46,597 bases of DNA from Octopus bimaculoides (Eukaryota): assembly GCF_001194135.2 (NCBI RefSeq), contig NC_068994.1:30771281-30817877 (forward strand), written 5' to 3'. The notes under the pieces were generated by a model, which worked only from the letters and a program-made list of their open reading frames with translations, made no database searches and was not told the DNA's origin. This document shows, piece after piece, positions 6,021 through 45,873 of this stretch (positions are counted from its first letter, which is position 1; the number at the start of each line of letters is the position of its first letter). The position numbers and the translations under genes are program-made.

Positions 6021-6059
6021 TTCGTGTTTAATTTATCAAGCTCTTTTTTTTTTTTTCAG

Positions 6060-6123
6060 CTAGTTCTGTATGAAGGGACCAGATGACAACCATTAACCTC
6101 CTGATGCCTATAACACTGTAGTT
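6060..6123 (+). promoter_or_regulatory. 5'UTR part of the first coding exon with two short upstream ORFs
   Basis: uORF 6070-6096 (ATG...TAA, in frame with the main ORF). uORF 6083-6121 (ATG...TAG) ends 2 nt before the main ATG. The acceptor at 6059 implies a further upstream non-coding exon. Confidence 0.5.
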
Positions 6124-6274
6124 ATGCCTCGCCGAAAATCAGCAGAAAGCCTAAAGAAGCAATGCCTTCACAGCATTGCTTTTAACATGGACAAGATGTT
6201 GAGCTCGGATTTCTATTCTAGTTTCCCAGTGGGTCCACGTCTCTACTATGTTATCGGACCATTTAGCTGCCTCA
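6124..6274 (+). CDS. LRR protein gene, first coding exon (MPRRKSAESLKKQCLHSIAFN...YVIGPFSCL)
   Basis: Poly-T tract plus CAG acceptor at 6057-6059, ATG at 6124 and a consensus donor A|GTAAGT at 6274/6275. It ends in phase 1, matching the next exon. Confidence 0.85.
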
Positions 6275-6479
6275 GTAAGTATTTTGATATTTTCAGTATT
6301 ACACCTAAATTTCTCAGCACAGAAATCCTTTATTAACCTTCTCGTATTTTGTATAGCTTTGTCCTTCGCTGCATTTTGATCAGGCCATTCTCTTTTTGTC
6401 TCAAAGTGTGTGTGTGTGTGTGTGTGTATACTCACACACACTGTATTATTCTGCAACTCACCATCCCTTTATACTGCCA

Positions 6480-7010
6480 GTCATCACTTTCTCTCCTCTG
6501 TGCCACATCTACTGACAGTCATCCCTCATTCTTACCATCTTCCAAAATCCCCCAACACTTACCCTTCCTGATCTTCTAACCCCTCATACTCTCCTATTTA
6601 CTTTTGTGATTCTTGATGGTACACTATTACACCACCACACCTCATTTACTACCACCTCCCTTATATAATTTCAGTTAGCCATGTGTCTCCTTTACAACAA
6701 CAAACCTGTTTCTGCCTTCTATCATACTTTTCTCAACACTTCACATAAAGCTGCCACCCTCCTTACTTTCCTTTCTCTCAGTTGATGGTCTTGCAGATTA
6801 CATGGTGACTTCACCTGTGCTGGTGCCATAAAGAAAAGCACCCTGTACATTCTGTAAAGTAGTTGGCATTAGGAAAGGCTCCTGATGACAGAAATCATGC
6901 CAAAACTGAAACATTGGAGCAAGACATGGTCCTCTGACCTATAGGATCCTCTTAAACTGTCCTACCTGCGCAGGCATGGAAAGTAGACGTGATATGATGA
7001 TGATAGTGAT
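6480..7010 (+). mobile_element. RTE 3'UTR-type fragment: C/T-rich spacer plus conserved tail ending (ATG)n
   Basis: AAAGCACCC...GTAAAGTAGTTGGCATTAGGAA...CATGGAAAGTAGACGTGATATGATGATG. Confidence 0.6.
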
Positions 7011-7680
7011 GAGAATATAGGGTGCAGGCATAACTGTATGGTTAAGAATTTCTCTGAATCTGCTATTTCTAGCACATCAAGCTCCATATAAAAGCTTCCT
7101 TAACTAGAGGTAATCTGGAGTTTTGAATCAGTGACAAATCCACTGTATTTAAATATCTAATGTCCATGAGAAGACATGAATGTTACTACACAACACTTCC
7201 TCGCCAACTACTTACTCAAAATTTGATTTCATTCACCTCTTTCTGCTCACAAAGTGATTGTAAAGACATTCTTTATATTTGTTTCATGTATATTGCAATA
7301 GCTAAATCTTGAACTAATTATATACTGTATTGTAAAAAGATGCCATAACTTAAATCTGTACTAATTACAGTATGCTGTATTACACACCACACTGATGGCT
7401 AAAATGCACACTAATTATTAGATTATAATAATCTAATTGTTTAACATCTGTTTTACTATCCCGGCATTGATTTGACTAGGAATTATTTTTATGATTGGAT
7501 GCAGTTTCTGTTGCCAACCCTTACCTGTTTTACTCATTTAAGGAATTTTTTTTTACTCCAGAGCTCTTTAAAAACTGGTCATAACATTGACAATCACCAC
7601 TGTGAGGAGCTTGAAATATTAGCATTCATACGCATACTTATATATGTGTGCGCACACACACACACACAACAACAACAGTG

Positions 7681-7805
7681 GGCCTCCTGCAGTTTCCTTC
7701 TCCCAAAATTCACTCACTTAGCCAAGCTACTATACACTAGGAGTGAACCTCAAGCCACATGGTTGTGAAATGAACCTCTTAACCTCACAGCCATGCCTGC
7801 TCCTG
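7681..7805 (-). mobile_element. CORE-like SINE head, decayed
   Basis: ccacatggttgtgaaatgaacctcttaacc...cagccatgcctgc, matching the copies at 640-690 and 19000-19058. Confidence 0.6.
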
Positions 7806-8155
7806 TACTATATTACACATTTATATTGTACATAAAACAAAACTCCGATACTAACGCTGTACCATGGTTTTTGATCAAGAGAAGGTAACTCAAGCAATTC
7901 AAAATGTATTAAAGTCAACTTTATTTATCTGCAGGGTTCTAGAAATATTTGAGTTGGTGACTGAACAAGTAGTAACACCTGAATTTAGGTGGGACAGACC
8001 TTTAGTTCTAGTCAGAACATCCTTCTCAGAGATGGAAAACCCCAAATTCATTATCTCCAACTAAGGGCTGAGTAGTCACACTGACTTTTGAAGGTTTTTG
8101 ATAGCAGATGGATAAAGGAAACATTCTTAAGGTGTCATATAAAAAAGTATTGGTG

Positions 8156-8380
8156 TGGGTACTGGTGCTGCACACAAATCACTTGTGCTGGTGTCATGTA
8201 AAAAGCACCCAATACACTCTGCTAAGTGGTTGGCATTACGAAGGGCATCCAGCTGTAGAAACTGAGCCAAAACAGACTATGGAACCTGGTGTGGCTCCTG
8301 GCCGTACCAGTTTCTGTCAAGCCGTCAAACCCATACCAACATGGAAAGCAGATGTTAAATGTTGATGATGATTGATGATG
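8156..8380 (+). mobile_element. RTE-tail/V-domain-like repeat ending in (ATG)n
   Basis: GTAAAAAGCACCC...GGTTGGCATTACGAAGGGCATCCAGCTGTAGAAAC...CATGGAAAGCAGATGTTAAATG. Confidence 0.8.
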
Positions 8381-8754
8381 AGCACTATGATAGTTTCCTG
8401 TCAAATTCTGCACAATCTCCAGTAACTCCAGTCTCTAGTCTCTTCTCCAGTCATCCTGAGTCGGATATGAGACATTTTGACACAATTGTTTTGGTATCAC
8501 TGATTTGACACTGGCATATTTGACATCAGTTGTTTTAATGTTTCTTTCATTTTAATGATAATCTTGTTCTCCCTCCCTCCCTTTGTTTGTCTATGTGTCT
8601 GTCTATTGCTCTCTCTTTCTCTGTTTATATGTGTGAGCATATTTCTCTTCATGTATATGAAAAGAGGAAAATTGCTTATGCCAATTGTGTTCAGTTAATA
8701 AATTATAATCTCTCTCTCTCTCTCTCTTTCTGTCTATGTGTATATTTCTGCACA

Positions 8755-8792
<38 letters not shown>

Positions 8793-8897
8793 TTGACTGT
8801 CCATTCAGTTGTACCAAATCAATGTCCAAACAGCCATGCCCAATCATTTCATTCTTTCCTGAGCATGTCTTGCTGCTGCATTCAAATGATTCTAGAT

Positions 8898-9142
8898 CAG
8901 TGGTTCTCTACTTGAGGTTCATATGACCCTTGAGAGTCCATATCAGATTTTGTAGTTAAGGTTTATGTGCAATAAACTGGTTATTCTTTTGCAATACACA
9001 AAAAATGTTTTAACAATTCTTTTATACAATTCTTAATGATATTTAATTAAAGAAATATGAGATTTTTTAAGCATTGAATGGTTATAAGAGCCCACCTGCG
9101 TAAAATAGGGATCTATAGGTAAAAATGGCTTCACAACCACTG
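8898..9142. mobile_element. hAT (Charlie-type) MITE
   Basis: Termini CAGTGGTTCTC...ACAACCACTG. Perfect 8-bp TSD TTCTAGAT at 8890-8897 and 9143-9150, matching the NTCTAGAN Charlie target preference. Confidence 0.85.
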
Positions 9143-9194
9143 TTCTAGATTAATATGGATTATGTTTTGCAAGTTTTCTCCAATCCAGTATAAC

Positions 9195-9520
9195 TACCAC
9201 CACCACCACCACTACCACTACCATCATCTTACTCTTAATACCACCCTTGTGCCACACCCTTCATATCACCATCACTACACTTTTTAATACTACAACCACT
9301 ACTTACATCATGTCACCACAACCACACCACTATCACCATCACAACTAATACCTCCACCATAACCACAACCACCATCACATTACCATCACCACTGTCACCA
9401 TCACACCCACAACCACCACCACAATTACCATCACTGCCATTCGCCTTCCCTCCACCATCATCACTATCACCACTATCATCACTACCACCATTACTACTAC
9501 TACTACTACCACTAGCATCA
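9195..9520. repeat. Degenerate (ACC/ACT/ATC)n trinucleotide low-complexity tract just upstream of exon 2
   Basis: Visible directly in the sequence. Confidence 0.85.
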
Positions 9521-9553
9521 CTAACCCTTCTGTGTTTCTGTCCCCTGTTACAG

Positions 9554-9723
9554 CCACTGAGATGACACAAGACCTGATCAACATTCTATCGGAGCAACGA
9601 CTGCTGAAACGACATCATCTGCAAGTATTGATCTGCACTCACCTGAAACAGCTGCAGTTAGATGTGTGTGGTTCGATAGCCAATCATGACAGTGTTGCAC
9701 GTATGGTTGGTGTTAGGTGCCAG
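9554..9723 (+). CDS. LRR protein gene, coding exon 2 (TEMTQDLINILSEQRLLKRHHLQVL...RMVGVRCQ)
   Basis: Acceptor tttctgtcccctgttacAG (9552-9553) and donor CAG|GTAAGT at 9723/9724. 170 nt, phase 1 to phase 0, bridging exons 1 and 3 exactly. LxxLxL pattern followed by RC. Confidence 0.9.
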
Positions 9724-9742
9724 GTAAGTCACAGCGATGGCA

Positions 9743-9829
9743 CATCATCATCATCATTTAACATCTGCTTTCCATGCTGGCATGGGTTGGACGGTTTGAC
9801 TGAAGGCTGGCGAGCCAGAAGGCTGCACC
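9743..9829 (-). mobile_element. RTE-tail repeat 3' end, antisense, about 19 nt downstream of the exon 2 donor
   Basis: CATCATCATCATCATTTAACATCTGCTTTCCATGCTGGCATGGGTTGGACGGTTTGAC. Confidence 0.8.
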
Positions 9830-10480: not shown

Positions 10481-10822
10481 GGCACCTGTGCCCAGCGTCA
10501 CCTTCCTGTGGCACGTGTAAAGACATTCGAGCGAGATCGTTGCCAGTGCTGCTGGACTGGCTCCTGTGCAGGTGGCACGTAAAATACACCATTTTGAGCG
10601 TGGCCATTGCCAGTACCGCCTGACTGGCCTTCGTGCTGGTGGCACGTAAAAGCACCCACTACACTCTCGGAGTGGTTGGCATTAAGAAGGCCATCCAGCT
10701 GTAGAGACTATACCAAATCAGATTGGAGCCTGGTGTAGCCATCTGGTTCACCAGTCCTCAGTCAAATTGTCCAACCCATGCTAGCATGGAAAGCGTACGT
10801 TAAACAATGATGATGATGATGA
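10481..10822 (+). mobile_element. RTE-tail/V-domain-like repeat, relatively intact
   Basis: Repeated GGTGGCACGTAAAA motifs, then GGTTGGCATTAAGAAGGCCATCCAGCTGTAGA, CATGGAAAGCGTACGTTAAACAATGATGATG. Confidence 0.85.
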
Positions 10823-12786: not shown

Positions 12787-14415
12787 ACTCTTACAAAGTT
12801 AAACCTGTCATCTCTGAACAATATTTCAACTAAGATCTTGGTTGATCTCATCTATAATGTACCACAGATCCAGTCCCTTGTATTACAGAACACCAAATGT
12901 AATGACCAAGTGATGTCAGTTATTGGTCGAACTTGCTGTCACCTCCGTGAGCTGAATGTCTTCAATTGTCCTGTTACTGATTCTGGCGCCTTCGGCTTAT
13001 GCGTGAAAAACTCTGCTGCTGGTGGTGTACCAAATTGTTCCCAGCTTGTCAGCCTGGACATTAATGCAACAGCAGTAAGCCTGAATGGCGCCAGTACCAT
13101 CTTGCAGAACTTACATCACCTGAAATATTTTCAGTATTGTGATGTGTGCGCTGTTTTTGAAAAACTTTATCTTGACAGTCTTCGGTTTGGCTCTTCATTT
13201 GTTGCCAGCCAGAACCGTGCTTATCGTACTCAACAGCTAGCTAATAGTGATTCATCATCAGTAGGTCCGTTAGAAGGAAACAAAGACACCAATGCATCAT
13301 TCATTAGCTTACTGAGCACAGTTGAAGATGGCAATGGGAACAAGGATGCACATGAGGATAAGTCGGAAAATGTCAATGATGCTGTTAGAAGCCAAATAGC
13401 CATCACAGCTCATACCAAAAGCAACAGTTTGAATAGTGTTGAGAGTCAGCGTAAGTATTGTATCAACTCTCTGACTGCAACAGGACTAAAGTGCTCTCTA
13501 GTTACTGCCCAAAGTATCAAAATAGCCTGTGAAGTATGTCCATATGTAACTGAGGTGTACCTTCATCAGAACATTGGTAATAAAGGTATGGTTCACCTGA
13601 CACAACTCTCACAATTACATGTTCTTGAAGTTGTCAGTTGTGCACCAGATCCCATAACATTCGAAGAAGGTCTTGTGCCTGTTCTGCGCAAGGCTGGCCC
13701 TACGTTATCACGCCTCACTCTGTATGATTTTTCTGATATTGACATTATTCGAATTGGGCAATACTGCCCTCAGCTTCATTATCTTAATTTAGAGTCATCA
13801 ATGTGTGACTTTATTGATTATGATATGAACGTTTTGAAGAAGTTCATTGTGAAAAATGGTAGCTTTCCTCCGTGGCAGGCCATGAAGTGTGCCAATATTC
13901 ACAATGATAATCCGCACACAAATAAATTGTGGACAAGACAGTCAGTGGGTAGCAAAGCAGGGTCTTCTTCTATTGGTTCTCCTTATGGTAACCAAGATGA
14001 CCGGGCCTCTCGATGTCAGGATGAAAATAACAGAGTCGGACTTTTTGCTCACATTAGAAGCTTACGAATAATATTACTCAGTGAGACGCATAACTTTCCT
14101 GCAGATGTACTACGACTAATCTTAATCAATGCAGAGAATTTGATCCATTTGCATCTAACAAACATGCAGTTTCTCACTCACAACCTGCTTATTTCAGTCC
14201 TGATGCACAACCCACTGTGTTTCTTGCAGACTCTCCTCTTGGAAATGTGTAATGGGGTTGATCGGGACTTTGTGATGCGCCTACTGACTGATGAACAAAA
14301 TGGTCTGCGCAGGCTTGATCTGATCGAGTGCCAGAGTATAACTAGGCGGGATTTCGAACACTTTCTAGACCGGGTACGCCAAGATAATGTTGATGTGACA
14401 ATAACTTGGATGTAA
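12787..14415 (+). CDS. LRR protein gene, terminal coding exon (RNI/AMN1-like leucine-rich repeats); full CDS 649 aa
   Basis: Acceptor ttttttgtttatttgtAG (12785-12786), then an in-frame open 1629-nt stretch (TLTKLNLSSL...VDVTITWM*). Repeated LRR motifs include LRELNVFNCPVTDSG, LVSLDINATAVS, LSRLTL, LQTLLLEMCNGV and LRRLDLIECQSIT. Confidence 0.95.
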   Translation, partial: TLTKLNLSSLNNISTKILVDLIYNVPQIQSLVLQNTKCNDQVMSVIGRTCCHLRELNVFNCPVTDSGAFGLCVKNSAAGGVPNCSQLVSLDINATAVSLNGASTILQNLHHLKYFQYCDVCAVFEKLYLDSLRFGSSFVASQNRAYRTQQLANSDSSSVGPLEGNKDTNASFISLLSTVEDGNGNKDAHEDKSENVNDAVRSQIAITAHTKSNSLNSVESQRKYCINSLTATGLKCSLVTAQSIKIACEVCPYVTEVYLHQNIGNKGMVHLTQLSQLHVLEVVSCAPDPITFEEGLVPVLRKAGPTLSRLTLYDFSDIDIIRIGQYCPQLHYLNLESSMCDFIDYDMNVLKKFIVKNGSFPPWQAMKCANIHNDNPHTNKLWTRQSVGSKAGSSSIGSPYGNQDDRASRCQDENNRVGLFAHIRSLRIILLSETHNFPADVLRLILINAENLIHLHLTNMQFLTHNLLISVLMHNPLCFLQTLLLEMCNGVDRDFVMRLLTDEQNGLRRLDLIECQSITRRDFEHFLDRVRQDNVDVTITWM

Positions 14416-14914: not shown

Positions 14915-15357
14915 ATGTGTATATATATATATGTATGTATGTGTATATATATATATATGTATGTGTATATATATATATATGTATGTATGTGTATATATAT
15001 ATATGTATGTATGTGTATATATATATNNNNNNNNNNNNNNNNNNNNNNNNNNNNNNNNNNNNNNNNNNNNNNNNNNNNNNNNNNNNNNNNNNNNNNNNNN
15101 NNNNNNNNNNNNNNNNNNNNNNNNNNNNNNNNNNNNNNNNNNNNNNNNNNNNNNNNNNNNNNNNNNNNNNNNNNNNNNNNNNNNNNNNNNNNNNNNNNNN
15201 NNNNNNNNNNNNNNNNNNNNNNNNNNNNNNNNNNNNNNNNNNNNNNNNNNNNNNNNNNNNNNNNNNNNNNNNNNNNNNNNNNNNNNNNNNNNNNNNNNNN
15301 NNNNNNNNNNNNNNNNNNNNNNNNNNNNNNNNNNNNNNNNNNNNNNNNNNNNNNNNN

Positions 15358-17026: not shown

Positions 17027-18073
17027 TGTAAAGAATATATATAACATATTACATCATATATATATACACACACACACATATATATAATGTGTGTATGTAT
17101 GTATATATNNNNNNNNNNNNNNNNNNNNNNNNNNNNNNNNNNNNNNNNNNNNNNNNNNNNNNNNNNNNNNNNNNNNNNNNNNNNNNNNNNNNNNNNNNNN
17201 NNNNNNNNNNNNNNNNNNNNNNNNNNNNNNNNNNNNNNNNNNNNNNNNNNNNNNNNNNNNNNNNNNNNNNNNNNNNNNNNNNNNNNNNNNNNNNNNNNNN
17301 NNNNNNNNNNNNNNNNNNNNNNNNNNNNNNNNNNNNNNNNNNNNNNNNNNNNNNNNNNNNNNNNNNNNNNNNNNNNNNNNNNNNNNNNNNNNNNNNNNNN
17401 NNNNNNNNNNNNNNNNNNNNNNNNNNNNNNNNNNNNNNNNNNNNNNNNNNNNNNNNNNNNNNNNNNNNNNNNNNNNNNNNNNNNNNNNNNNNNNNNNNNN
17501 NNNNNNNNNNNNNNNNNNNNNNNNNNNNNNNNNNNNNNNNNNNNNNNNNNNNNNNNNNNNNNNNNNNNNNNNNNNNNNNNNNNNNNNNNNNNNNNNNNNN
17601 NNNNNNNNNNNNNNNNNNNNNNNNNNNNNNNNNNNNNNNNNNNNNNNNNNNNNNNNNNNNNNNNNNNNNNNNNNNNNNNNNNNNNNNNNNNNNNNNNNNN
17701 NNNNNNNNNNNNNNNNNNNNNNNNNNNNNNNNNNNNNNNNNNNNNNNNNNNNNNNNNNNNNNNNNNNNNNNNNNNNNNNNNNNNNNNNNNNNNNNNNNNN
17801 NNNNNNNNNNNNNNNNNNNNNNNNNNNNNNNNNNNNNNNNNNNNNNNNNNNNNNNNNNNNNNNNNNNNNNNNNNNNNNNNNNNNNNNNNNNNNNNNNNNN
17901 NNNNNNNNNNNNNNNNNNNNNNNNNNNNNNNNNNNNNNNNNNNNNNNNNNNNNNNNNNNNNNNNNNNNNNNNNNNNNNNNNNNNNNNNNNNNNNNNNNNN
18001 NNNNNNNNNNNNNNNNNNNNNNNNNNNNNNNNNNNNNNNNNNNNNNNNNNNNNNNNNNNNNNNNNNNNNNNNN

Positions 18074-18748: not shown

Positions 18749-18924
18749 ATAGAACATCTGAAAAATCTAGTCAGTACAGTGGTGTGTGTGTATACACACA
18801 CACACACACACACACACACAGATATATATNNNNNNNNNNNNNNNNNNNNNNNNNNNNNNNNNNNNNNNNNNNNNNNNNNNNNNNNNNNNNNNNNNNATAT
18901 ATATATACATACTTATATATATAC

Positions 18925-21749: not shown

Positions 21750-21847
21750 NNNNNNNNNNNNNNNNNNNNNNNNNNNNNNNNNNNNNNNNNNNNNNNNNNN
21801 NNNNNNNNNNNNNNNNNNNNNNNNNNNNNNNNNNNNNNNNNNNNNNN

Positions 21848-22400
21848 ATCACCATCATCATCATCATCATCATCATTACCGCTTAACATCCGTTTTCCAT
21901 GCTGGCATGGGTTGGACGGTTTGACTGGAGACTGGCAAGCTAGGTCGCACCAGGCTCCAGTCTGATCTGGCAATGTTTCTACAGCTGGATGCCCTTCCTA
22001 ATACCAACCACTCTGAGAGTGTAGTGGGTGCTTTTTACGTGCCACTGACACAGGAGCCAGTCGAGTGGGTGGGGCTGGCATTAGCCACATTCGGATAGTG
22101 CTTTTTATGTGCCACCAGCATGGGGAGCCAGTCAGGCGGCTCTGGCAGCGACCTATGCATGAATGAATGGTGCTTATCATGTGCTACCAGCACTGGTAAC
22201 GGCCACAACTACAATTTCCATTTGATTGTAATTTGATTTGATTTTGATTTACTTGACTAAATAGGTCTCCTCAAGCACAGAATGTTGCCTCACGATTCAA
22301 TGGTGCTTTTTAAATGGGGTGGTTATGCAACGCTGGTGTAGGCTACGGCTGTGATCTCACTTTCCTTGCCGGGTTTTCTCAATCACAGCATATCTTCAGA
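21848..22400 (-). mobile_element. RTE LINE extreme 3' end with full UTR and (ATG)n tail
   Basis: Minus strand begins GATATGCTGTGATTGAGAAAACCC, the same motif that ends the RTE ORFs at about 3105, 5557 and 28000. It ends GGAAAACGGATGTTAAGCGGTAATGATGATG. Confidence 0.8.
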
Positions 22401-25336: not shown

Positions 25337-25907
25337 TTATTCGGATTCTTACTATAAAGCCACTATTGTTTTAGTATGAGGGAAAATTGCCTAAGCATCA
25401 TCAGAANNNNNNNNNNNNNNNNNNNNNNNNNNNNNNNNNNNNNNNNNNNNNNNNNNNNNNNNNNNNNNNNNNNNNNNNNNNNNNNNNNNNNNNNNNNNNN
25501 NNNNNNNNNNNNNNNNNNNNNNNNNNNNNNNNNNNNNNNNNNNNNNNNNNNNNNNNNNNNNNNNNNNNNNNNNNNNNNNNNNNNNNNNNNNNNNNNNNNN
25601 NNNNNNNNNNNNNNNNNNNNNNNNNNNNNNNNNNNNNNNNNNNNNNNNNNNNNNNNNNNNNNNNNNNNNNNNNNNNNNNNNNNNNNNNNNNNNNNNNNNN
25701 NNNNNNNNNNNNNNNNNNNNNNNNNNNNNNNNNNNNNNNNNNNNNNNNNNNNNNNNNNNNNNNNNNNNNNNNNNNNNNNNNNNNNNNNNNNNNNNNATTC
25801 TACAACATACAATGGCTTGTATGCATAATTAATCAGTTAATTAATCAACTAATTAATGGAACAGCCCTCAGCCATTCTCCTTAGACCTTATTTATCTATC
25901 AATCTAC

Positions 25908-26464: not shown

Positions 26465-28281
26465 TGGGAGAAGGAGAGTCTGCCTAATGTAGACCCAACT
26501 GAGGGACCGGTTATCAACGATAGCTTGGTAGATGAAGTAATTAAGGATATGAAGACAGGGAAAGTCTCAGCCCATTAGGAATCACTGAGATGCTTAAAAT
26601 ATCTGGCAGAGTGGGATATGGCCTAGTCACCTGTATAGTTAATTGAGTTGTCTATGAGGGTGTCATACCCAACGATTGATGTAGCAACATTATGATCAGC
26701 TGCTACAAAAGCAAAGGTGATGCCTTTGACAGAAATAACTCCAGAGGCATCAAATTGCTGGACCAGGTGATGAAAGTCACAGGAAGGCTCACAGTTCAAT
26801 TAGGAAGAGAATTAATGTAGATGAGATGCAATTTGGATTTGTGCCATGTAGAAGCACAACTGATGCTATAGAAGTATTTAGCCAAAAATAAACCTCTGTC
26901 CTTGACTTTTGTTGACATAGAGAAAGCTTTTGACAGAGTCCTCTGCTCCCTTATTCGGTGATCAATGTGGAAGTGAGGGGTAGATGAGTGGTTAGTGTGA
27001 TTTGTACAAACCTTGTACAGTGATGCTGCCAGTAGGGTGTAGGCTGGCAATGAGTACTGCAATGAAGTTAGTGTATAAGTAGGAGTTCACCAAGAATCAA
27101 TTCTCAGCCCCCTCTCATTTATCTTTCTCCTCCAGACCTTAATAGAGGAATTCAAGACTGGCTTCCCCTTGGAGCTCTTCTACTCTGATGACCTTGTTCA
27201 TATAACTGAACCACTACCTTTTCTGACCTAGAGAAGAAATTTCAGGGGTGGAAGCTAAGGGTCTTAGAGTTAATTTAACAAAAACCAAAGTCTTACTCAG
27301 TAGGAAAACAGACAAATCACAAGTCCCTTCAGGGAGATGGCCTTGCTCAATATGTAAGAAGGATGTTGGTAGAAACTCCATATATTGTATCCAGTGCTAG
27401 CTTTGGACAAAAGAGGTGTAGTGGTATCACAGAAAGGTAAATGGAGAAAATAGATTTTGTGTTGCAAATGTGCAGGTACAATAAATACTAAAAATGTGCT
27501 GACAATAGACTCTCAAATGCTCAAGGGAATCATTGGTAGTAGTAGATAGATTCTGTTGCCTTGGTGATCAAGTTAGCAGTGGAGGAGGAAGTTTTGACAG
27601 TGTTATTGCTAAAGTAAGAACAGGCTAGACAAAGTTCAGAGAGCTTCTACCTTTGTTGGCAACTAAGGGTCTCTCCCTCAGAATGAAAAGTAAATTATAT
27701 GATGCTTGTGTATGTACAGCTATGCTACATGGCAGTGAAACATGGGCTTTGACTACAGAGAACTTGTGAAGGCTTGAAAGAAATGAAGCTAGCATGCTCC
27801 ACTGGATGGATAATGTCAGTGTGACAGATGAGCTTGGTCATGTGATGTGTATGGATGAGAACAACTGCATAAAGAAGTGCCTAGCTCTAATTGTGGAGGG
27901 AACCTGTGAAAAGGGTAGACCCAGGAAGACATAGGATGAAGTGGTGGGAAAGGATCTTCGGATGTTGAGCCTCATTGAAGCTGGGAGTTGTGGCAATTTG
28001 CTGTATTTGAGAAGACGCATGAAGCTAAGTAAAATTGCTATCATCCATACTTACAGGCTTGTTCTTTACAGGTGCTGGTGTCACATAAAATGTACTCGTG
28101 CCAGTGGCATGTAAATAGCACTGAGCACACTTTATAAAGTGGTTGGCATTAAGAGGGGTGTCCAGCTGTAGAAACCATGCTACAACAGACAGCTGGAGTC
28201 TGGACTGCTCCCTTGCTGGCCAGCTCCTGTCAAACCGTCCAACCCATGCCATCATGAAAAACAGATGTTAATCGATGATAA
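26465..28281 (+). mobile_element. RTE-clade LINE (RT plus C-terminus, short UTR and tail), degraded
   Basis: Remnants RGIKLLDQVMKV, DEMQFGFVP, FVDIEKAFDRV, GVHQESILSPLSF, ELFYSDDLV, KTKVL and GRPRKT. The conserved tail follows at 28060-28281. Confidence 0.9.
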
Positions 28282-29744: not shown

Positions 29745-30450
29745 TAGCAGTTTACTCAAAGTAACTGTCTTCAGTTTCCTCAACATTCTTAAGACAATTC
29801 TGGAGCCTGGTGTATGCATTTCTCAATGTCTCCCTGGGGAGATCTTCAAGCACCTCTTTGATTCTTGGCCACCAGCTTGGTCTTGGTGTTGCCGACAGAC
29901 CAGTTGGTATCTTTCTCAGCTGTACCTCACACATAGTAATCCATAGGATTACAATCGGGTTGATTAGGAGGCCAGAAATTGAGGCTGGTAAGTCATAGGA
30001 ATATCTGCGACAACCACTTCTGATACTTTCTGGGGGTATGGCAAGGAGCTGAATCTTGCTGCTGTACATACGTCTTTCCAGCAGCAACCCTCTCCAGGCA
30101 AGGATTCACTACAGTCTCCAGCAGCTTCATATAATTGTCTGAATTGAGCCTAAGGCCCAGTTTAAAGATGAGGTGAATTATGGCGGGCAGCTGACCATGT
30201 TATGTATTACAGCCTTTACAATGTTCACAGTGCATTGAGCAGCAGCCATGATGTTGGCATTTTGATGCTCAGCACGAATTATCATGATACAAGTAACTGT
30301 TTTCCAATATTTAGATGCCTTCCAGCCTTCCATGTCAGCTGACATTTTATCGACTACAACTTCAAATTTTATGCTCTTCAATGCAGTTGACTGTTCACTA
30401 TTACATTTAGCTGTTCCTGATAGAAAGGTGACATCAAGCATCATCAAATT
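29745..30450 (-). mobile_element. Tc1/mariner (maT/DD37D-like) remnants
   Basis: Minus-strand FWPPNQPDCNPMDYYV*GTAEKDTN and RIKEVLEDLPRETLRNAYTR. The N-terminal-like KYWKTVTCIMIIRAEH resembles the copy at 20338-20878. Confidence 0.7.
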
Positions 30451-30559: not shown

Positions 30560-32215
30560 GAAGACAGGTGTATGAATAACAAGTGAGTGTATTAATTTGA
30601 TGCTCGGGATAGTGAGAAAGTCTTTTACCTTTCGAGCGTATGCTCTTCAACAGAAAGGAATAAGAAAAAATAAAGAGAGAATAAAAAAAAAGTTGTGGAT
30701 TTAGCGATTAAGCATGGCAACTGGTTGGGAAACAAGGGTTTGACAGGTGAAGTAGAAAGAAGGGGAGATAATAAAGTATCGGTGATCCCAAAATGAAGGT
30801 ACGCATGCATGTGAGAATGTGTAAGTGTGTGTGTGGATAGGGACTAGTAAATTTAACGTGTGGGTGTGCAGATGATGGTGTGAGTACTGGGAAGTGGTCA
30901 GTGTTAGTGTGTGTGGAGTTGTGTGAAACGGTGAGATGGAAGTTTGGGTAGGGGTAGGAGTGGGGTGTGGGTAGAGGGGGTAGGAGTGAAGAGATTAATC
31001 AGATGAAGAGGGGCGGGGAGTTGAGCCATGTGGTACAAAGGAGCTAAGAGAGAAGATTAATTCTTGTTCATGGTAAAGGCAGGAGTCTGGATGGCCCCTG
31101 TGCAAAGACAATCCGAACATAAATAGGTGTTGTAGAGCGGAAATGGCGCGAGACTAGGGTGATGTCTGATGTCTCGGAGACGCTCTACGAACCGGTCAGC
31201 CAAGCAGCATCCCGTTTGACTGATGTACAGAGAAGGGCGGAAAGAGCAAGTGATGCAGTAAATGACGTTGCTAGAAGAGCAGGAAAAGGAGTCGGTGATA
31301 TAGAGACGATGATGAGTGCCTATAAGGATGGTGGTGTTGGAGAGGTAAGGACAAGTGCGGCAGTGTGGGCTGGAGCAGGGGAACGAGCCAGGTTGGGAGG
31401 TGGGGTTAGGGAAAAACTGTGGACCATGAGGTCACGTAGGTTGTGGGTTTGTTTGAAGGAAAGGAGTAGATTGGGGAAGATGTGCGAGGTGGAGGGGTTA
31501 GTCTGGAGTCGCCGGAAGGCTCAGAGAATGGTGCGTTGGAGGGGTGGTAGGTGAGGGGAGAGAGAGCAGAGGCACGGTCCCCGGAAGTGCTCTGGCAAGG
31601 GCTGTGTGGATAGTGGTGAAGGAATATCTACAAAGGATGAAGTGGCGAGCCATGAGTTGAGACTGAATCGAAAAGTCATGGTTGTCGCTGTAGAGCCTGT
31701 GCAGATGGAGAAATTGAGAATAGGGGATGGAGAGTATGGTGCGGGTAGGGTGGGAGGAGGAGACGTTAAGGTATGAGTGTGAGTTGGTGTGTTTGTAGTG
31801 GATGGAGGTAGTGAGAGCGGAGTGGTGTATGTTGACCGAAATATCGAGAAATACTAAGGAAGTGTTGGAAATAGTGCAGGAAAATTTAAGGGTGGGATGG
31901 AAGGATTGGACAAAAGAGAGGAAAGAGTCTAGTTGTTCGCAAGATTTGAGGTCGCACCGATACAATCCTCAATATAACAACCGTATAGTTTGTGAGTGGG
32001 ACCAGTGAATTGTAAGAATATTTGGTCCTCAACGTAGCCAACGAACAGGTTCGCATAGTTGGGGCCCATTCTCGTTCCCACGACCACTCCCGAGATTTGT
32101 TGGTAAAAATTCCCCGCGAACGAGAAGTAGTTGAGCGGGAGAATAAGTTCGGCCAGATGAAGAAATGTAGAGGTGACCAGTTGGGGGTTGGGTCGAAGGT
32201 TTAGGAAGTGCTTGA
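30560..32215 (-). mobile_element. Penelope-like retroelement: RT C-half, GIY-YIG and 3' pseudo-LTR
   Basis: GTRMGPNYANLFVGYVE; FLDISV...HYKHTNSHSYL..SSSHP...SIPYSQFLHL; SSNVIYCITCS...LYISQTG...DRF.E. Coding part about 31005-32215, with frameshifts. Confidence 0.9.
30622..30657 (-). ncRNA. Degenerate minimal type-I hammerhead ribozyme motif in the Penelope 3' region
   Basis: Minus strand: CTTT CTGTTGA A GAGC-ATAC-GCTC GAAA G GTA AAAG. Stems I and II are intact, with two deviations from CUGANGA and GAAACGUH. Confidence 0.5.
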
Positions 32216-33404: not shown

Positions 33405-34004
33405 CGAGGGGGTACCCAAAAGAAACCGGAATTTTGCAATAGTATTTTATCCACTTGGTTTTACATGATTTCAATTGCAATTCCTCGTTCAAAATTCGCT
33501 GGCAGGAGCTCCAGGACAAACTAGTTATATCAACAAGTTCGTCAATTGTTCGGTGACGGTCCTTCAAGATCAGTTCCTGAATTTTCACGATCTTTTTCGT
33601 TCGATCGGAAGGTCGACGGTCGCCCTAAACGAGGTTGGTCTTCAAACGACAACTGACTATTTCTAAAACGTGAAAACCACTCGTAAACTTGTATTTTGTT
33701 CATGGCAGCGTCCTTATAAGTTGTCTGAAGCATGACAACTGTTTCGACCGCCGTTTTCCCAGCACAAAACAGAATTTCACGGAAGCACGTTGTCCCTTCG
33801 TTTCAGTTATCGCAAAAATCGACGAACAGAGGAGAAGCATTGCAAAACAAAGACGCACCACGTGGCAGTACGACTTCACTCGACGACCCCGATCGGCAGA
33901 CTTTTGCCTGAGGGTTGCATCAAGTGGCTTTAGCGGCGGAAGCCCGAACTACAGTGAGTCTATCTCACAGAGAAAGTTTCCGGTTACTTTTGAGTACCCA
34001 CTCA
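33405..34004 (-). mobile_element. 600-bp internally deleted mariner with both TIRs
   Basis: TIRs CGAGGGGGTACCCAAAAGAAACCGGAA / TTCCGGTTACTTTTGAGTACCCACTCA, with TA on both sides (33403-33404, 34005-34006). Transposase HTH remnants VYEWFSRFRN...EDQPRLGRPST and KDRHRTIDEL. Confidence 0.9.
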
Positions 34005-37877: not shown

Positions 37878-38542
37878 GCACTATATCAGGAGAATATGAT
37901 GGGTGCGATAGAACTTCTCAACCATGCTCTTGCATAGCATCTTTGGTCAAATTAGCGACGTAGGGACGAGCGTTGTCATGTTGAAGAAGCACGTAGTGTT
38001 TGTTGTCAGTTGGTGTTTCAGCTGGATTACCTCGTTGAATCAGTGCACTTGCTGGATGTATTGACAGGGAGGTTGTTTACAAGAATTTCGTAGTGGATTA
38101 ACCCTTCTCAATCCCACCAAATTTAGATTATTGTTTTTGTGGACGTAGCTCTTACCTGGCTTAGGGTGTTGCTTGTTTTTTGGAATTTTGCCATTATTTC
38201 TTCTGCTTCATATTGACATAAACACCATTTTCCCTTGTCTGTGACGATGCAGTAAAAACCTCTCTGTTTCAGTTCACGAATAGACTGGGTTCGAGTGAGT
38301 AAACTGGTAGCAATGGAGGAGCTCTGGAGTTTGTCTCTTTCGTTGAGAGTGTGTGGATCCATGTACCGAACTTTTGAACTTTATCCAGCGAATGAAGGTG
38401 ATGTACGACAGCAGCACGAGAACATCTCATCTGCTGGGTTAATTCCCAAGTAGATTGACGTAAATCCTCGTGGATGACCTGATTCAATCTCCTTATTGAT
38501 TTGAACCGGCGGGCTGGAAAGCAGAGAGCCAGACCGAATTTT

Positions 38543-39052
38543 GGATCTTTTCAATTTGACGGCCAGATTTTTTTATTAATTTTTTTTTTTCACTAAACAC
38601 TTTGAAACTTCGGATATTGGTAGAATGTGTCACACAGAACAGGGTTTACTCTTAACGTTTTTGACAAAAATTTGTATTTTAGAAGTTATTTCGTGTTAAA
38701 GTTGTCGTATTTGGGTAATTCTAACCAATCAATGACGTGTATTCAGCTGAAGAAAATTACTGCTGCTGTTTGCGAACAACTTTCGGGTCCACTCCCCAAA
38801 CAAAACCCTTCTTTAATAACCAGAGATGTTTTTATAGCAGCATAAGTTTGCTGTATGAGGGTTGATTAATTGGTTAGAATTACCCAAATACGACAACTTT
38901 AACATGAAATAACTTCTAAAATACAAATTTTTGTCAAAAACGTTAAGAGTAAACCCTGTTCTATGTGACACATTCTACAAGTATCCGAAGTTTCAAAGTG
39001 TTTTGTTAAAAAAGAATTAATTAAAAATCTGGCCGTCAAATTGAAAAGATCC
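38543..39052. mobile_element. Foldback MITE with ~185-bp TIRs
   Basis: Arms 38543-38729 and 38869-39052 are near-perfect reverse complements. TSD CGAATTTT at 38535-38542 and 39053-39060. Confidence 0.9.
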
Positions 39053-39355
39053 CGAATTTTCACTCCTCGAAGCGTGAAAACCATTTCTGTACACAACACC
39101 TCTGTACACAACACAATTGTCTCGAGTGGCTTTGGAAGCATTGGGACCTTGATTGAAAGCGAAGAGAAGTAAGTGTCGAAAATGCTCGTGTTTTTCTACT
39201 TGACACTCCCTTGTCATATGCCTAAAAAAAAGTAAAATATATTCAAATTTCAAAAACGATAAACAAAAATTATAGAGGAAAAATAACGCTATAAGCAAAG
39301 TAGCTTGTTAAAGTCTCTACTAGAGATGAAAATAGTAACTATACTGAGAAGTAAT

Positions 39356-39896: not shown

Positions 39897-40013
39897 NNNN
39901 NNNNNNNNNNNNNNNNNNNNNNNNNNNNNNNNNNNNNNNNNNNNNNNNNNNNNNNNNNNNNNNNNNNNNNNNNNNNNNNNNNNNNNNNNNNNNNNNNNNN
40001 NNNNNNNNNNNNN

Positions 40014-41337: not shown

Positions 41338-41907
41338 ATATTTCGGGATGGTCATTTTCTTTTTTTTTNNNNNNNNNNNNNNNNNNNNNNNNNNNNNNNN
41401 NNNNNNNNNNNNNNNNNNNNNNNNNNNNNNNNNNNNNNNNNNNNNNNNNNNNNNNNNNNNNNNNNNNNNNNNNNNNNNNNNNNNNNNNNNNNNNNNNNNN
41501 NNNNNNNNNNNNNNNNNNNNNNNNNNNNNNNNNNNNNNNNNNNNNNNNNNNNNNNNNNNNNNNNNNNNNNNNNNNNNNNNNNNNNNNNNNNNNNNNNNNN
41601 NNNNNNNNNNNNNNNNNNNNNNNNNNNNNNNNNNNNNNNNNNNNNNNNNNNNNNNNNNNNNNNNNNNNNNNNNNNNNNNNNNNNNNNNNNNNNNNNNNNN
41701 NNNNNNNNNNNNNNNNNNNNNNNNNNNNNNNNNNNNNNNNNNNNNNNNNNNNNNNNNNNNNNNNNNNNNNNNNNNNNNNNNNNNNNNNNNNNNNNNNNNN
41801 NNNNNNNNNNNNNNNNNNNNNNNNNNNNNNNNNNNNNNNNNNNNNNNNNNNNNNNNNNNNNNNNNNNNNNNNNNNNNNNNNNNNNNNNNNNNNNNNNNNN
41901 NNNNNNN

Positions 41908-43430: not shown

Positions 43431-44258
43431 CCCCCCTCTCTCTCTCTATATATATATATATAGAGAGANNNNNNNNNNNNNNNNNNNNNNNNNNNNNNNN
43501 NNNNNNNNNNNNNNNNNNNNNNNNNNNNNNNNNNNNNNNNNNNNNNNNNNNNNNNNNNNNNNNNNNNNNNNNNNNNNNNNNNNNNNNNNNNNNNNNNNNN
43601 NNNNNNNNNNNNNNNNNNNNNNNNNNNNNNNNNNNNNNNNNNNNNNNNNNNNNNNNNNNNNNNNNNNNNNNNNNNNNNNNNNNNNNNNNNNNNNNNNNNN
43701 NNNNNNNNNNNNNNNNNNNNNNNNNNNNNNNNNNNNNNNNNNNNNNNNNNNNNNNNNNNNNNNNNNNNNNNNNNNNNNNNNNNNNNNNNNNNNNNNNNNN
43801 NNNNNNNNNNNNNNNNNNNNNNNNNNNNNNNNNNNNNNNNNNNNNNNNNNNNNNNNNNNNNNNNNNNNNNNNNNNNNNNNNNNNNNNNNNNNNNNNNNNN
43901 NNNNNNNNNNNNNNNNNNNNNNNNNNNNNNNNNNNNNNNNNNNNNNNNNNNNNNNNNNNNNNNNNNNNNNNNNNNNNNNNNNNNNNNNNNNNNNNNNNNN
44001 NNNNNNNNNNNNNNNNNNNNNNNNNNNNNNNNNNNNNNNNNNNNNNNNNNNNNNNNNNNNNNNNNNNNNNNNNNNNNNNNNNNNNNNNNNNNNNNNNNNN
44101 NNNNNNNNNNNNNNNNNNNNNNNNNNNNNNNNNNNNNNNNNNNNNNNNNNNNNNNNNNNNNNNNNNNNNNNNNNNNNNNNNNNNNNNNNTATATATATAC
44201 ACAACATCAGATCAGAAAAGTAGATAAGCACAAGTAGGCTTAATGCGTATATTTACAT

Positions 44259-45166: not shown

Positions 45167-45873
45167 CAAGGGCCCGGAAACAGGGGGTGCAGGTGGTACT
45201 CTTACACCCACTAAAATTTTTAGGGGCTGCAAAATCAAAATTTGCACCCCCCACATACTTTGTCAGGTTTAGAAAATAGTGTCTAAAAACTGATCTGTAA
45301 AAAGTTGCTTGAAGTTAGGTTCTCAAAATAAGAACAAAAGGACAAAAATATATAAATAAAAAGTCCCAAATGTTTACTAATGAAGCTAGTCATAAAATTC
45401 CCCAGGGAATTCTCCATAATGAAAACCCTTCACTGTCCAGCTATCCACATTCTTCATTTTCTCTTAATACTACAACTGACCCATCATCATCATCATCATT
45501 GCCATAATATTCAACTGCTACAACCATAACCACTACTACTATCAGGCCTTTCTTCCCACCACTCTCCACCTCAGTTTGAATGTCTACCTCACAGATNNNN
45601 NNNNNNNNNNNNNNNNNNNNNNNNNNNNNNNNNNNNNNNNNNNNNNNNNNNNNNNNNNNNNNNNNNNNNNNNNNNNNNNNNNNNNNNNNNNNNNNNNNNN
45701 NNNNNNNNNNNNNNNNNNNNNNNNNNNNNNNNNNNNNNNNNNNNNNNNNNNNNNNNNNNNNNNNNNNNNNNNNNNNNNNNNNNNNNNNNNNNNNNNNNNN
45801 CAATCTTTATATACAGGTTGTCTACTTCACTGTGTGTGTGTGTGTGTGTGCATACATACGTATATACATATAA

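What the first reader, a model, noticed from the sequence alone, without database searches (positions are those of the whole stretch)
6124..9723. N-terminal BC-box and Cullin-box-like motifs suggest the LRR protein is an uncharacterised Cullin-RING E3 substrate receptor
Seen: the spliced N-terminus reads ESLKKQCLHSIAFNMDK...GPFSCLTTEMTQDLINILSEQRLL before the LRRs. Known: Elongin-BC receptors carry a BC box, (S/T/P)LxxxCxxx-hydrophobic, followed by a Cullin box. ZYG11/ZER1 and PRAME place this VHL-box directly in front of LRRs. SLKKQCLHSI fits the BC box. LTTEMTQDLINIL parallels the ZYG11-type downstream helix as I recall it, but lacks the usual proline. Inference: this is a VHL-box+LRR receptor with no ARM domain, possibly from an invertebrate family usually annotated only as an F-box/LRR or uncharacterised protein. 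The motif is invisible in the ORF track because it spans two small exons.
Basis: partly seen in the sequence, partly recalled or inferred. Interest (0 to 1): 0.7.

Follow-up and report, generated by a model that had tools for sequence, protein, structure and literature searches.

The report
Octopus LRR protein with BC box
This octopus gene encodes an unstudied leucine-rich-repeat protein, from a family found across animals, whose conserved first 80 residues match the part of yeast Rad7 that grips Elongin C, so it is probably a substrate-choosing subunit of a cullin ubiquitin ligase, not the F-box protein databases call its relatives.

Summary
A three-exon gene (6124-6274, 9554-9723, 12787-14415, + strand) encodes a 649-aa protein. 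It differs at 6 residues from Octopus sinensis LOC115219491, an "uncharacterized protein". SLKKQCLHSI (aa 9-18) fits the BC-box consensus. LTTEMTQDL (aa 50-58) spans the exon 1/2 junction.

An exhaustive HMMER search finds a large family. Named representatives run from a sea anemone to reptiles; no mammal or bird was among the 30 named. All are labelled uncharacterized or F-box/LRR. In 69 N-termini, L10 is kept in 68. Residue 14 is C/S/A in all 69 and residue 18 is I/V/L in all 69.

A profile of the pre-LRR region alone gives one significant PDB hit. That hit is yeast Rad7 in its crystal complex with Elongin C (5ZB2, E=2.6e-6). L10 and C14 align with Rad7 L168 and C172, the residues changed in the SOCS-box mutant. 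No F-box model matches any of 58 N-termini.

The second motif maps by register onto ZYG11B F50/P51/V54/L58, which contact Elongin C.

Best reading: an Elongin BC-cullin substrate receptor, Rad7/AMN1-like and not ZYG11-like by sequence. Main rival: a split atypical F-box that binds SKP1, as reported for yeast Amn1. Binding, cullin identity and substrate are untested.

The parts
6124..6274 (+). Coding exon 1: Met1 to Leu50 plus the first base of codon 51. It holds the whole BC-box helix and the invariant GPF.
   Evidence: ATG at 6124, with an in-frame stop 9 codons upstream. Donor GTAAGT at 6275. The product matches O. sinensis LOC115219491.
6148..6177 (+). BC box SLKKQCLHSI (aa 9-18).
   Evidence: Fits (S,T,P)Lxxx(C,S,A)xxx-hydrophobic, the consensus quoted from PMC4878042. 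In the family, L10 is kept in 68 of 69, position 14 is C/S/A in 69 of 69 and position 18 is I/V/L in 69 of 69. L10 and C14 align with Rad7 chain residues L8 and C12, taken to be L168 and C172.
6151..6201 (+). Predicted first helix (aa 10-26), which carries the BC box.
   Evidence: AF2 full-length model: helix 10-26, with block-mean pLDDT 95 for residues 11-20 and 85 for 21-30. In the N-terminal-only model the helix spans 10-33.
6256..6264 (+). G45-P46-F47, at the end of the long loop between the two motifs.
   Evidence: G45 and P46 are invariant and F47 is kept in 68 of 69 family N-termini.
6275..9553 (+). Intron 1 (3.3 kb).
   Evidence: GT...AG borders. It contains microsatellites and one SINE-like repeat copy at 8325-8346.
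9554..9723 (+). Coding exon 2: aa 51 (last two bases of the codon) to Q107. It holds the second helix, a third helix and the first LRR strand.
   Evidence: Acceptor AG at 9552-9553 and donor GTAAGT at 9724.
9556..9594 (+). Second helix, TEMTQDLINILSE (aa 52-64). With L50 and T51 it forms the motif L-T-x-x-M-x-x-x-L. This is the family's version of hydrophobic-P-x-x-hydrophobic-x-x-x-hydrophobic.
   Evidence: AF2 helix 52-64, block-mean pLDDT 96 for residues 51-60 and 95 for 61-70. The full Cul2-box consensus is met in 28 of 69 members, and in 53 of 69 if P/T/S/A is allowed at the proline position. By register it maps onto ZYG11B F50/P51/V54/L58, which line the cavity that takes Elongin C L104 (PMC13201589).
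9724..12786 (+). Intron 2 (3.1 kb).
   Evidence: GT...AG borders, in phase with exon 3. SINE-like repeat copies at 9770-9791 and 10770-10791.
12787..14415 (+). Coding exon 3: aa 108-649 plus the stop codon. It encodes the LRR solenoid, taken to be the substrate-binding domain, ending in the conserved ...ITWM.
   Evidence: ORF seen. Pfam LRR_6 match. The AF2 model shows alternating strand/helix repeats to the C-terminus. W648 is nearly invariant.
13252..13440 (+). Disordered insertion 1 (aa 263-325).
   Evidence: pLDDT below 50 over 263-301, 312-314 and 316-325. The non-cephalopod relatives are about 150 aa shorter, around 500 aa. Four of the six differences from O. sinensis fall here.
13861..14031 (+). 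Disordered insertion 2 (aa 466-522).
   Evidence: pLDDT below 50. This stretch is variable or deleted among cephalopods. Two of the six differences from O. sinensis fall here.

Best explanation
The gene encodes a substrate receptor of an Elongin B/C-cullin-RING (ECS-type) ubiquitin ligase.

Proposed mechanism. The first ~80 residues form a VHL-box-like adaptor module with four parts: an N-terminal helix (aa 10-26) carrying a canonical BC box, a ~25-residue loop ending in an invariant GPF, a second helix (aa 52-64) with the pattern hydrophobic-(P/T)-x-x-hydrophobic-x-x-x-hydrophobic, and a third helix leading into the LRRs. By analogy with Rad7-Elc1 and ZYG11B-EloBC, L10 would insert into the hydrophobic pocket of Elongin C. 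C14, L15, I18, L50, M54 and L58 would form the complementary cavity. The LRR solenoid (aa ~83-649, with two cephalopod-specific disordered inserts) would bind the substrate, which is unknown. The cullin is more likely CUL2-type than CUL5-type.

Shown here: the gene model, the motif, its conservation, homology of the module to Rad7's Elongin C-binding module, and the absence of an F-box signature.

Inferred: Elongin C binding, the identity of the cullin, and ligase function.
For: (1) Gene model and motif.

(2) Family size. An exhaustive HMMER search finds 789 proteins at E<=1e-3 and 230 at E<=1e-10. Many are about 500 aa long and match from residue 1.

(3) Conservation. L10 in 68 of 69, position 14 C/S/A in 69 of 69, position 18 I/V/L in 69 of 69. 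The set C, S, A is exactly the small-residue set the BC-box consensus allows.

(4) Homology to Rad7. A profile of the pre-LRR 86 columns alone has one significant PDB hit, Rad7 5zb2_A, at E=2.6e-6 (query 5-85 against chain 3-80). The only other row is an L-amino acid oxidase at E=0.89. hhalign gives 94.6% probability.

(5) 5zb2_B is Elongin C.

(6) The aligned Rad7 residues L8 and C12 correspond to L168 and C172. The L168A/C172A SOCS-box mutant fails to ubiquitinate Rad4 after UV (PMC4551923).

(7) No F-box. None of 58 N-termini hits any Pfam F-box or SOCS_box model at E<=10. The FBXL2 control scores F-box-like at 4e-15. hhalign against the FBXL2 N-terminus gives 0.45%.

(8) The ZYG11B-EloBC cryo-EM structure shows that a BC helix, a long loop and an F-P-x-x-V-x-x-x-L helix together bind Elongin C. 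The octopus residues map onto these by motif register.

(9) The AF2 models are confident over the module, with block-mean pLDDT of 72-96 in the full-length model.

(10) The Cul5 box LP-hydrophobic-P is found in 0 of 69 members, against 28 of 69 for the full Cul2-box consensus.
Against: (2) The BC box alone is a short motif that occurs by chance somewhere in 18.5% of shuffles of this protein.

Its yeast namesake Amn1 is reported as an atypical split F-box protein that co-precipitates with Skp1 and Cdc53 (PMC6181423).

(4) UniProt names two family members 'F-box domain-containing protein', which suggests that some signature method saw an F-box.

(5) Octopus has T51 where the Cul2 box has proline, and L26 where 64 of 69 relatives have W.

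(6) Foldseek could not single out Rad7. It ranks 9th among generic LRR proteins with the full model, and the isolated N-terminal model found nothing.
Confidence: 0.6

Rival explanations
1. The N-terminal module is an atypical split F-box: helix 1, then an insertion, then helix 2. It binds SKP1, making the protein an SCF (CUL1) receptor, as automated annotation implies.
For: (1) The family aligns with human AMN1 from residue 1 (hhalign 98.7% with the full-length profile and 84.8% with the N-terminal profile).

(2) Yeast Amn1 is described as having an F-box split by a 56-aa insertion. It co-precipitates with Skp1 and Cdc53, and Ace2 is stabilised in skp1 and cdc53 mutants (PMC6181423).

(3) F-boxes with loops between helices are accepted for Amn1, Ctf13 and others (PMC9485057).

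(4) Relatives are named F-box/LRR-repeat protein 2, 13 or 20, or 'F-box domain-containing protein'.

(5) The LPxxLxxxL helix resembles F-box helix 1. hhalign aligns it there with FBXL2, though not significantly.
Against: (1) No F-box model matches any of 58 N-termini, while the control is found at 4e-15.

(2) The PDB holds many F-box/LRR proteins (FBXL2, TIR1, COI1 and MAX2/D3 all appeared in other searches here), yet the N-terminal profile hits only Rad7.

(3) The hallmark LP of F-box helix 1 is absent from the first helix. Position 14 is restricted to C/S/A, which is a BC-box feature.

(4) There is no equivalent of F-box helix 3 with its conserved Trp. This comes from my reading of the family consensus against the F-box consensus as I know it, not from a tool result.

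(5) One published census lists Rad7 and Ela1, both Elongin C partners, under 'F BOX' (PMC2198940), so that label is unreliable.

(6) The link between yeast Amn1 and this family was not tested directly.
Confidence: 0.2
2. It is the animal ortholog of yeast and plant RAD7. It would work in global-genome nucleotide excision repair as part of an Elongin C-cullin ligase acting on the XPC/Rad4-type damage sensor. It would have been retained in many animals and lost in mammals and birds. This is a special case of the best explanation, with a specific substrate and pathway.
For: (1) Rad7 is the only significant PDB hit for the N-terminal module.

(2) The architecture is the same: a BC-box module directly followed by an LRR solenoid to the C-terminus.

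(3) No mammal or bird appeared among the 30 named representatives sampled. That would fit a UV-repair factor with patchy retention.
Against: (1) Beyond the first two repeats, the LRR part is no closer to Rad7 than to other LRR proteins. With the cephalopod profile, FBXL2 LRRs score 31.8 bits, against 23.4 bits for Rad7, most of which comes from the N-terminus.

(2) Foldseek TM-score normalised to the target is 0.56 for Rad7 and 0.64 for FBXL2.

(3) No reciprocal search or phylogeny could be made. The Rad7 fragment search returned nothing usable.

(4) Whether these animals have a Rad16 partner is unknown.

(5) AMN1 is at least as close a relative as Rad7.
Confidence: 0.12
3. The conserved N-terminus is only a structural cap of the LRR solenoid, or a binding site for an unrelated partner. 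The protein would then not be part of any cullin ligase.
For: (1) Short BC-box-like strings are common by chance.

(2) Hydrophobic residues spaced i, i+4, i+8 on a helix could simply pack against the first repeats.

(3) No experiment links any family member to ubiquitination, and no paper mentions the zebrafish gene symbol.
Against: (1) Conservation goes beyond what a hydrophobic core needs. M1-P2, S/T9, N21, W26 and G45-P46-F47 are all conserved.

(2) The homologous module in Rad7 is seen bound to Elongin C in a crystal.

(3) The analogous module in ZYG11B is seen bound to Elongin C by cryo-EM.
Confidence: 0.08

Closest known systems
Yeast Rad7 (SOCS/BC-box LRR subunit of the Rad7-Rad16-Elc1-Cul3 ligase; PDB 5ZB2, Rad7-Elc1)
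   Same: The N-terminal module aligns over about 80 residues (E=2.6e-6; hhalign 94.6%). L10 and C14 fall on Rad7 L168 and C172, and W26 and G45 are also shared. Like octopus, Rad7 has no proline in the second motif (V-S-T-A-N-L-N-N-L). Both proteins run from a BC-box module straight into an LRR solenoid that reaches the C-terminus.
   Different: Rad7 has about 160 residues in front of the BC box, whereas here the BC box starts at residue 9. The LRR domain is longer here, and beyond the first two repeats it is not specifically Rad7-like. Whether a Rad16-type partner or a role in DNA repair exists is unknown. Orthology was not established.
AMN1 (human 'antagonist of mitotic exit network 1 homolog'; yeast Amn1)
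   Same: Human AMN1 also starts MPR... and has L10, C14 and a hydrophobic residue at 18 in the same positions, followed by an LPxxIxxxL helix and LRRs. hhalign gives 98.7% over 195 columns starting at residue 1.
   Different: AMN1 is only 258 aa long and lacks 18 residues of the loop that contains YViGPF. Yeast Amn1 is reported to bind Skp1/Cdc53 through a split F-box, which is a different adaptor from the one proposed here.
ZYG11B / ZER1 (CRL2 receptors: VHL box + LRR + ARM)
   Same: The layout of the adaptor module is the same: a BC-box helix at the extreme N-terminus, an unusually long loop, then a hydrophobic-P-x-x-hydrophobic-x-x-x-hydrophobic helix, then LRRs. In the ZYG11B-EloBC structure both motifs contact Elongin C. 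hhalign puts the motifs in register.
   Different: The sequence similarity is not significant (5.5% and 1.2%). Full-length ZYG11B is in the PDB and was not hit by the family's N-terminal profile. There is no ARM domain here. In ZYG11B the substrate binds the ARM domain, whereas here only LRRs are available.
F-box/LRR proteins (FBXL2, FBXL13, FBXL20, EBF2), the labels given to relatives
   Same: The LRRs are of the same cysteine-containing, RNI-like type. FBXL2 LRRs are the best PDB hit for the cephalopod full-length profile (31.8 bits) and rank among the top Foldseek hits.
   Different: No F-box is present (0 of 58 N-termini; control 4e-15). The N-terminus carries a BC box instead.

Membership tests
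BC-box (VHL-box / SOCS-box) receptors of Elongin BC-cullin ligases | BC box (S,T,P)Lxxx(C,S,A)xxx-hydrophobic on a helix | tested here: met
   SLKKQCLHSI at aa 9-18, on predicted helix 10-26. The consensus is quoted from PMC4878042. The strict consensus is met in 56 of 69 family members, and L...[CSA]...hydrophobic in 68 of 69.
BC-box (VHL-box / SOCS-box) receptors of Elongin BC-cullin ligases | Cullin box downstream: the Cul2 box (hydrophobic-P-x-x-hydrophobic-x-x-x-hydrophobic) or the Cul5 box (LP-hydrophobic-P) | tested here: inconclusive
   Octopus has LTTEMTQDL, with T in place of P. The full Cul2-box pattern is present in 28 of 69 relatives at this position. The Cul5 box is found in 0 of 69. 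The spacing from the BC box is long: the median distance from L10 to GPF is 35 residues.
BC-box (VHL-box / SOCS-box) receptors of Elongin BC-cullin ligases | Physical binding to Elongin C/B and to CUL2 or CUL5 | not testable with these tools
The only support is by homology to Rad7-Elc1.
Rad7 family | N-terminal SOCS/BC-box module homologous to Rad7 residues ~163-240 | tested here: met
   hmmsearch with the pre-LRR profile gives Rad7 5zb2_A as the one significant hit, E=2.6e-6. hhalign gives 94.6%.
Rad7 family | Orthology over the whole protein (reciprocal best match or phylogeny) and a Rad16 partner | tested here: inconclusive
   Beyond the first two repeats the LRR part is not specifically Rad7-like. 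The Rad7-fragment search found nothing usable. A Rad16 partner could not be looked for.
F-box/LRR (FBXL) proteins | An F-box domain detectable N-terminal to the LRRs | tested here: not met
   None of 58 family N-termini hits Pfam F-box, F-box-like or F-box_4 at E<=10. The FBXL2 control scores 4e-15. hhalign against the FBXL2 N-terminus gives 0.45%.
ZYG11/ZER1 family | C-terminal armadillo-repeat domain behind the LRRs | tested here: not met
   The AF2 model shows strand/helix LRR units up to residue 648 and no ARM domain.
ZYG11/ZER1 family | Significant sequence similarity of the N-terminal VHL box | tested here: not met
   hhalign gives 5.5% for ZYG11B and 1.2% for ZER1. The ZYG11B chains 9lk2_A and 9bid_A are in the PDB and were not hit.
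AMN1 family | N-terminal MPR...L10...C14 module followed by RNI-type LRRs | tested here: met
   hhalign gives 98.7% (E=2.5e-16) from residue 1. The lengths differ greatly (258 against ~500-650 aa), so this looks like a sister family, not membership.

The most novel reading that the evidence does not exclude
Animals other than mammals and birds retain an ortholog of the yeast and plant repair factor Rad7. Under this reading, the octopus gene and its relatives from cnidarians to reptiles form an Elongin C-cullin ligase that acts in global-genome nucleotide excision repair, on the XPC/Rad4-type sensor. That pathway is currently thought to be replaced by DDB1-DDB2 in animals.
Probability: 0.12. 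Interest if true: 0.75.

Novelty: new member of a known kind. Interest (0 to 1): 0.5.

Why it matters
If the prediction holds, cullin ligase biology gains a widely conserved substrate-receptor family that has never been studied. One likely reason is that it was not seen in mammals, and another is that databases label its members F-box proteins or leave them unnamed.

It would also tie together three groups: Rad7 (fungi and plants), AMN1, and this animal family. All three share one adaptor module, a BC-box helix, a long loop and a second helix. A recent ZYG11B structure paper described that layout as unique to the ZYG11 family.

Two practical gains follow. The F-box/LRR labels on the relatives sampled here look wrong and could be corrected. 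The family also has members in tractable animals such as zebrafish, Xenopus-like frogs and Nematostella, where the adaptor, cullin and substrates could be identified. A possible role in UV repair could be tested in the same animals.

Tried and rejected
(1) Word-index protein searches were of little use. The octopus protein found only five cephalopod sequences. A 42-sequence family profile was swamped by generic LRR candidates. The Rad7 fragment found one irrelevant short hit. No Rad7-family profile could therefore be built, and orthology stays open.

(2) Foldseek with the full-length model is dominated by generic LRR proteins such as FBXL17, FBXL2, ribonuclease inhibitor and NLRPs. Rad7 ranks only 9th, so this search does not discriminate.

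(3) Foldseek with the isolated N-terminal 108 residues returned nothing below E=1. It favours neither an F-box nor a BC box.

(4) Pfam has no model for this N-terminal module, nor for those of Rad7, ZYG11B or AMN1.

(5) Membership of the ZYG11/ZER1 family was considered and rejected. There is no ARM domain and the profile scores are not significant.

(6) A SOCS box of the CUL5 type was considered and rejected, because no LP-hydrophobic-P motif occurs in any of 69 members.

(8) A literature search for the zebrafish gene symbol found nothing.

(9) ORFs elsewhere in the window were screened for a neighbouring gene. Only decayed transposon fragments turned up.

Full report
**1. What is in the sequence**

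The window is draft cephalopod DNA. It is AT-rich, full of microsatellites, and broken by ten runs of N.

On the + strand, an ATG at 6124 opens a 151-nt exon ending at a GTAAGT donor (6275). An in-frame stop lies nine codons upstream of that ATG. A second exon, 9554-9723, follows a TACAG acceptor and ends at another GTAAGT. A third exon starts behind TTGTAG at 12787 and runs to the stop at 14413-14415.

The 649-aa product differs at only six residues from the annotated Octopus sinensis LOC115219491, an "uncharacterized protein". All six differences fall in predicted disordered inserts. The splicing is therefore confirmed independently.

SLKKQCLHSI (aa 9-18) lies wholly in exon 1. LTTEMTQDL (aa 50-58) spans the exon 1/2 junction.

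**2. Is the motif more than chance?**

Alone, it is not. The BC-box pattern turns up somewhere in 18.5% of shuffles of this protein, and in the first 20 residues in 0.7%. Conservation and homology decide the matter.

An exhaustive HMMER search with the cephalopod alignment found 789 proteins at E<=1e-3 and 230 at E<=1e-10. Many are about 500 aa long and match from residue 1. I looked up names for 30 representatives:
- Lophotrochozoans: the molluscs Patella, Potamilus, Pinctada and Nucella, the annelid Owenia, the brachiopod Lingula and the nemertean Lineus.
- Arthropods: the centipede Strigamia, the shrimp Penaeus, a krill and the amphipod Hyalella.
- Other invertebrates: the starfish Patiria, amphioxus and the sea anemone Nematostella.
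- Vertebrates: a shark, a bichir, a tarpon, a frog, a turtle and three squamates.

Every name is "uncharacterized", "hypothetical", or an F-box/LRR label (FBXL2, 13, 20, EBF2-like, "F-box domain-containing"). No mammal, bird, insect or nematode was in this sample. That is an observation on a sample, not a demonstrated absence.

In 69 aligned N-termini:
- L10 is kept in 68.
- Position 14 is C in 64, S in 4 and A in 1. These are exactly the residues the BC-box consensus allows (PMC4878042).
- Position 18 is I, V or L in all 69.
- Position 9 is S, T or P in 56.
- M1-P2, N21, W26 and G45-P46-F47 are also conserved.

**3. What the N-terminal module is related to**

Pfam sees only LRRs in the protein.

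A single-sequence search of the PDB put yeast Rad7 (5zb2_A) first, through the N-terminus: query 5-141 against chain 3-134. I then built a profile of only the 86 pre-LRR columns from 58 family members. Against the whole PDB its one significant hit is Rad7, at E=2.6e-6, over query 5-85 and chain 3-80. The only other row is an L-amino acid oxidase at E=0.89. hhalign gives 94.6% probability.

Chain B of 5ZB2 is Elongin C, so the matched region belongs to a solved Elongin C complex.

The 405-residue chain has exactly the length of Rad7 161-565, taking Rad7's length of 565 aa from memory. On that numbering the aligned L8 and C12 are L168 and C172. Those are the two residues changed in the Rad7 SOCS-box mutant that fails to ubiquitinate Rad4 after UV (PMC4551923). 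The numbering offset is my inference from chain length. It fits the residue identities.

**4. Tests against an F-box**

- None of the 58 N-termini hits any Pfam F-box or SOCS_box model, even at E<=10.
- A positive control, the FBXL2 N-terminus, scores F-box-like at 4e-15.
- hhalign of the family N-terminus against FBXL2 gives 0.45%.
- The PDB holds many F-box/LRR proteins, and none was hit by the N-terminal profile.

**5. The ZYG11 parallel**

Sequence similarity to ZYG11B and ZER1 is not significant (5.5% and 1.2%), although the motifs align in register. My recalled ZYG11B sequence was verified as identical to PDB chains 9lk2_A and 9bid_A. The missing hit is therefore meaningful.

The layout is nevertheless the same. 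The 2026 ZYG11B-EloB-EloC cryo-EM paper (PMC13201589) reports three relevant points:
- L18 of the BC box enters the Elongin C pocket.
- Elongin C L104 sits in a cavity made of L19, C22, L23, L26, F50, P51, V54 and L58.
- An unusually long loop joins the BC box to the Cullin box.

By motif register these residues correspond to octopus L10 and to K11, C14, L15, I18, L50, T51, M54 and L58. In the family consensus, seven of the eight cavity positions are hydrophobic or proline.

The full Cul2-box pattern is present in 28 of 69 relatives, and in 53 of 69 if P/T/S/A is allowed at the proline position. The Cul5-box LP-hydrophobic-P occurs in none. Rad7, like octopus, has no proline there.

**6. Structure**

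AlphaFold2 with a 42-sequence family alignment gives a confident model: mean pLDDT 81 and pTM 0.78. It shows helices at 10-26, 28-33, 52-64 and 70-76, then strand/helix LRR units to residue 648. Two disordered inserts lie at 263-325 and 466-522. The ~500-aa non-cephalopod relatives are about 150 aa shorter. There is no ARM domain.

Foldseek with the whole model finds generic LRR proteins, with Rad7 ranked ninth. The isolated N-terminal model (pLDDT 85) finds nothing. These searches are uninformative, not negative.

**7. A complication: AMN1**

Human AMN1 aligns with the family from residue 1. It also starts MPR and has L10, C14 and F18. hhalign gives 84.8% with the N-terminal profile and 98.7% with the full-length profile.

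Yeast Amn1 has been described as an atypical F-box protein whose F-box is split by a 56-residue insertion. It co-precipitates with Skp1 and Cdc53 (PMC6181423). That bipartite description sounds like the same two-helix module, so SKP1 binding is a live rival.

Four points argue against it:
- Position 14 is restricted to C/S/A.
- The first helix has no LP.
- There is no counterpart of F-box helix 3 (my reading of the consensus, not a tool result).
- One published census lists Rad7 and Ela1, both Elongin C partners, under "F BOX" (PMC2198940), so that label is unreliable.

I could not compare yeast Amn1 directly.

**8. Conclusion**

The most likely reading (about 0.6) is a substrate receptor of an Elongin BC-cullin ligase with a Rad7/AMN1-type adaptor module. 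The cullin is probably CUL2-type, and the substrate is unknown.

Rivals:
- A SKP1-binding split F-box: about 0.2.
- A true RAD7 ortholog acting in excision repair, which is a sub-case of the main reading: about 0.12.
- A mere structural cap: about 0.08.

The kind of system is known. The family is unstudied and mislabelled. I rate it a new member of a known kind, of moderate interest.

Noticed in passing
window 13252-13440 and 13861-14031 (aa 263-325 and 466-522): Two long, low-confidence (pLDDT below 50) Ser/Asn/Asp-rich inserts interrupt the LRR solenoid. The ~500-aa relatives from other phyla are about 150 aa shorter, and Argonauta lacks part of the second insert. All six differences between this window and the O. 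sinensis protein fall inside these inserts.
   Followed up: partly
window 6124-6129 (Met1-Pro2) and family alignment A2: The family starts almost invariably with Met-Pro (M1 in 55 of 69, P2 in 52 of 69), followed by basic residues. The BC box begins only eight residues later. After Met removal, a conserved N-terminal proline could be a Pro/N-degron or an adaptor contact. This is speculation.
   Followed up: no
window 8325-8346(-), 9770-9791(+), 10770-10791(-), 21895-21916(+), 28238-28259(-): Five copies of a SINE-like repeat with the core TTCCATGCTGGCATGGGTTGGA (none expected by chance). Three lie in the two introns of this gene, and one starts about 20 nt after the exon 2 donor.
   Followed up: partly
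window 39020-39298(-) and 33545-33733(-): Short ORFs match the HTH domain of Mos1/mariner transposase (HTH_48; E=2.3e-6 and E=1.6e-3). They are decayed mariner-type transposon remnants downstream of the gene. Other ORFs that look transposon-like at 29755-30130(-), 31501-31965(-) and 38126-38487(-) gave no Pfam hit.
   Followed up: partly
window 15027-15357, 17109-18073, 18830-18896, 21750-21847, 25407-25796, 39897-40013, 41369-41907, 43469-44189, 45597-45800, 46227-46326: Ten assembly gaps (runs of N, 3,532 bases in all), mostly flanked by TA/CA-type microsatellites. No second credible gene was seen in the 32 kb downstream of the LRR gene or the 6 kb upstream.
   Followed up: no
AMN1 aligns with the octopus family from residue 1. 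Rad7, AMN1, ZYG11/ZER1 and this family may share one ancestral module: adaptor helix, long loop, second helix, then LRRs. The ZYG11B structure paper calls the long loop unique to ZYG11 proteins.
   Followed up: partly
window 6050-6123: A polypyrimidine tract and an AG at 6058-6059 lie 65 nt upstream of the ATG. This suggests that the first coding exon is preceded by an intron and a separate 5'-UTR exon outside or upstream in the window.
   Followed up: no
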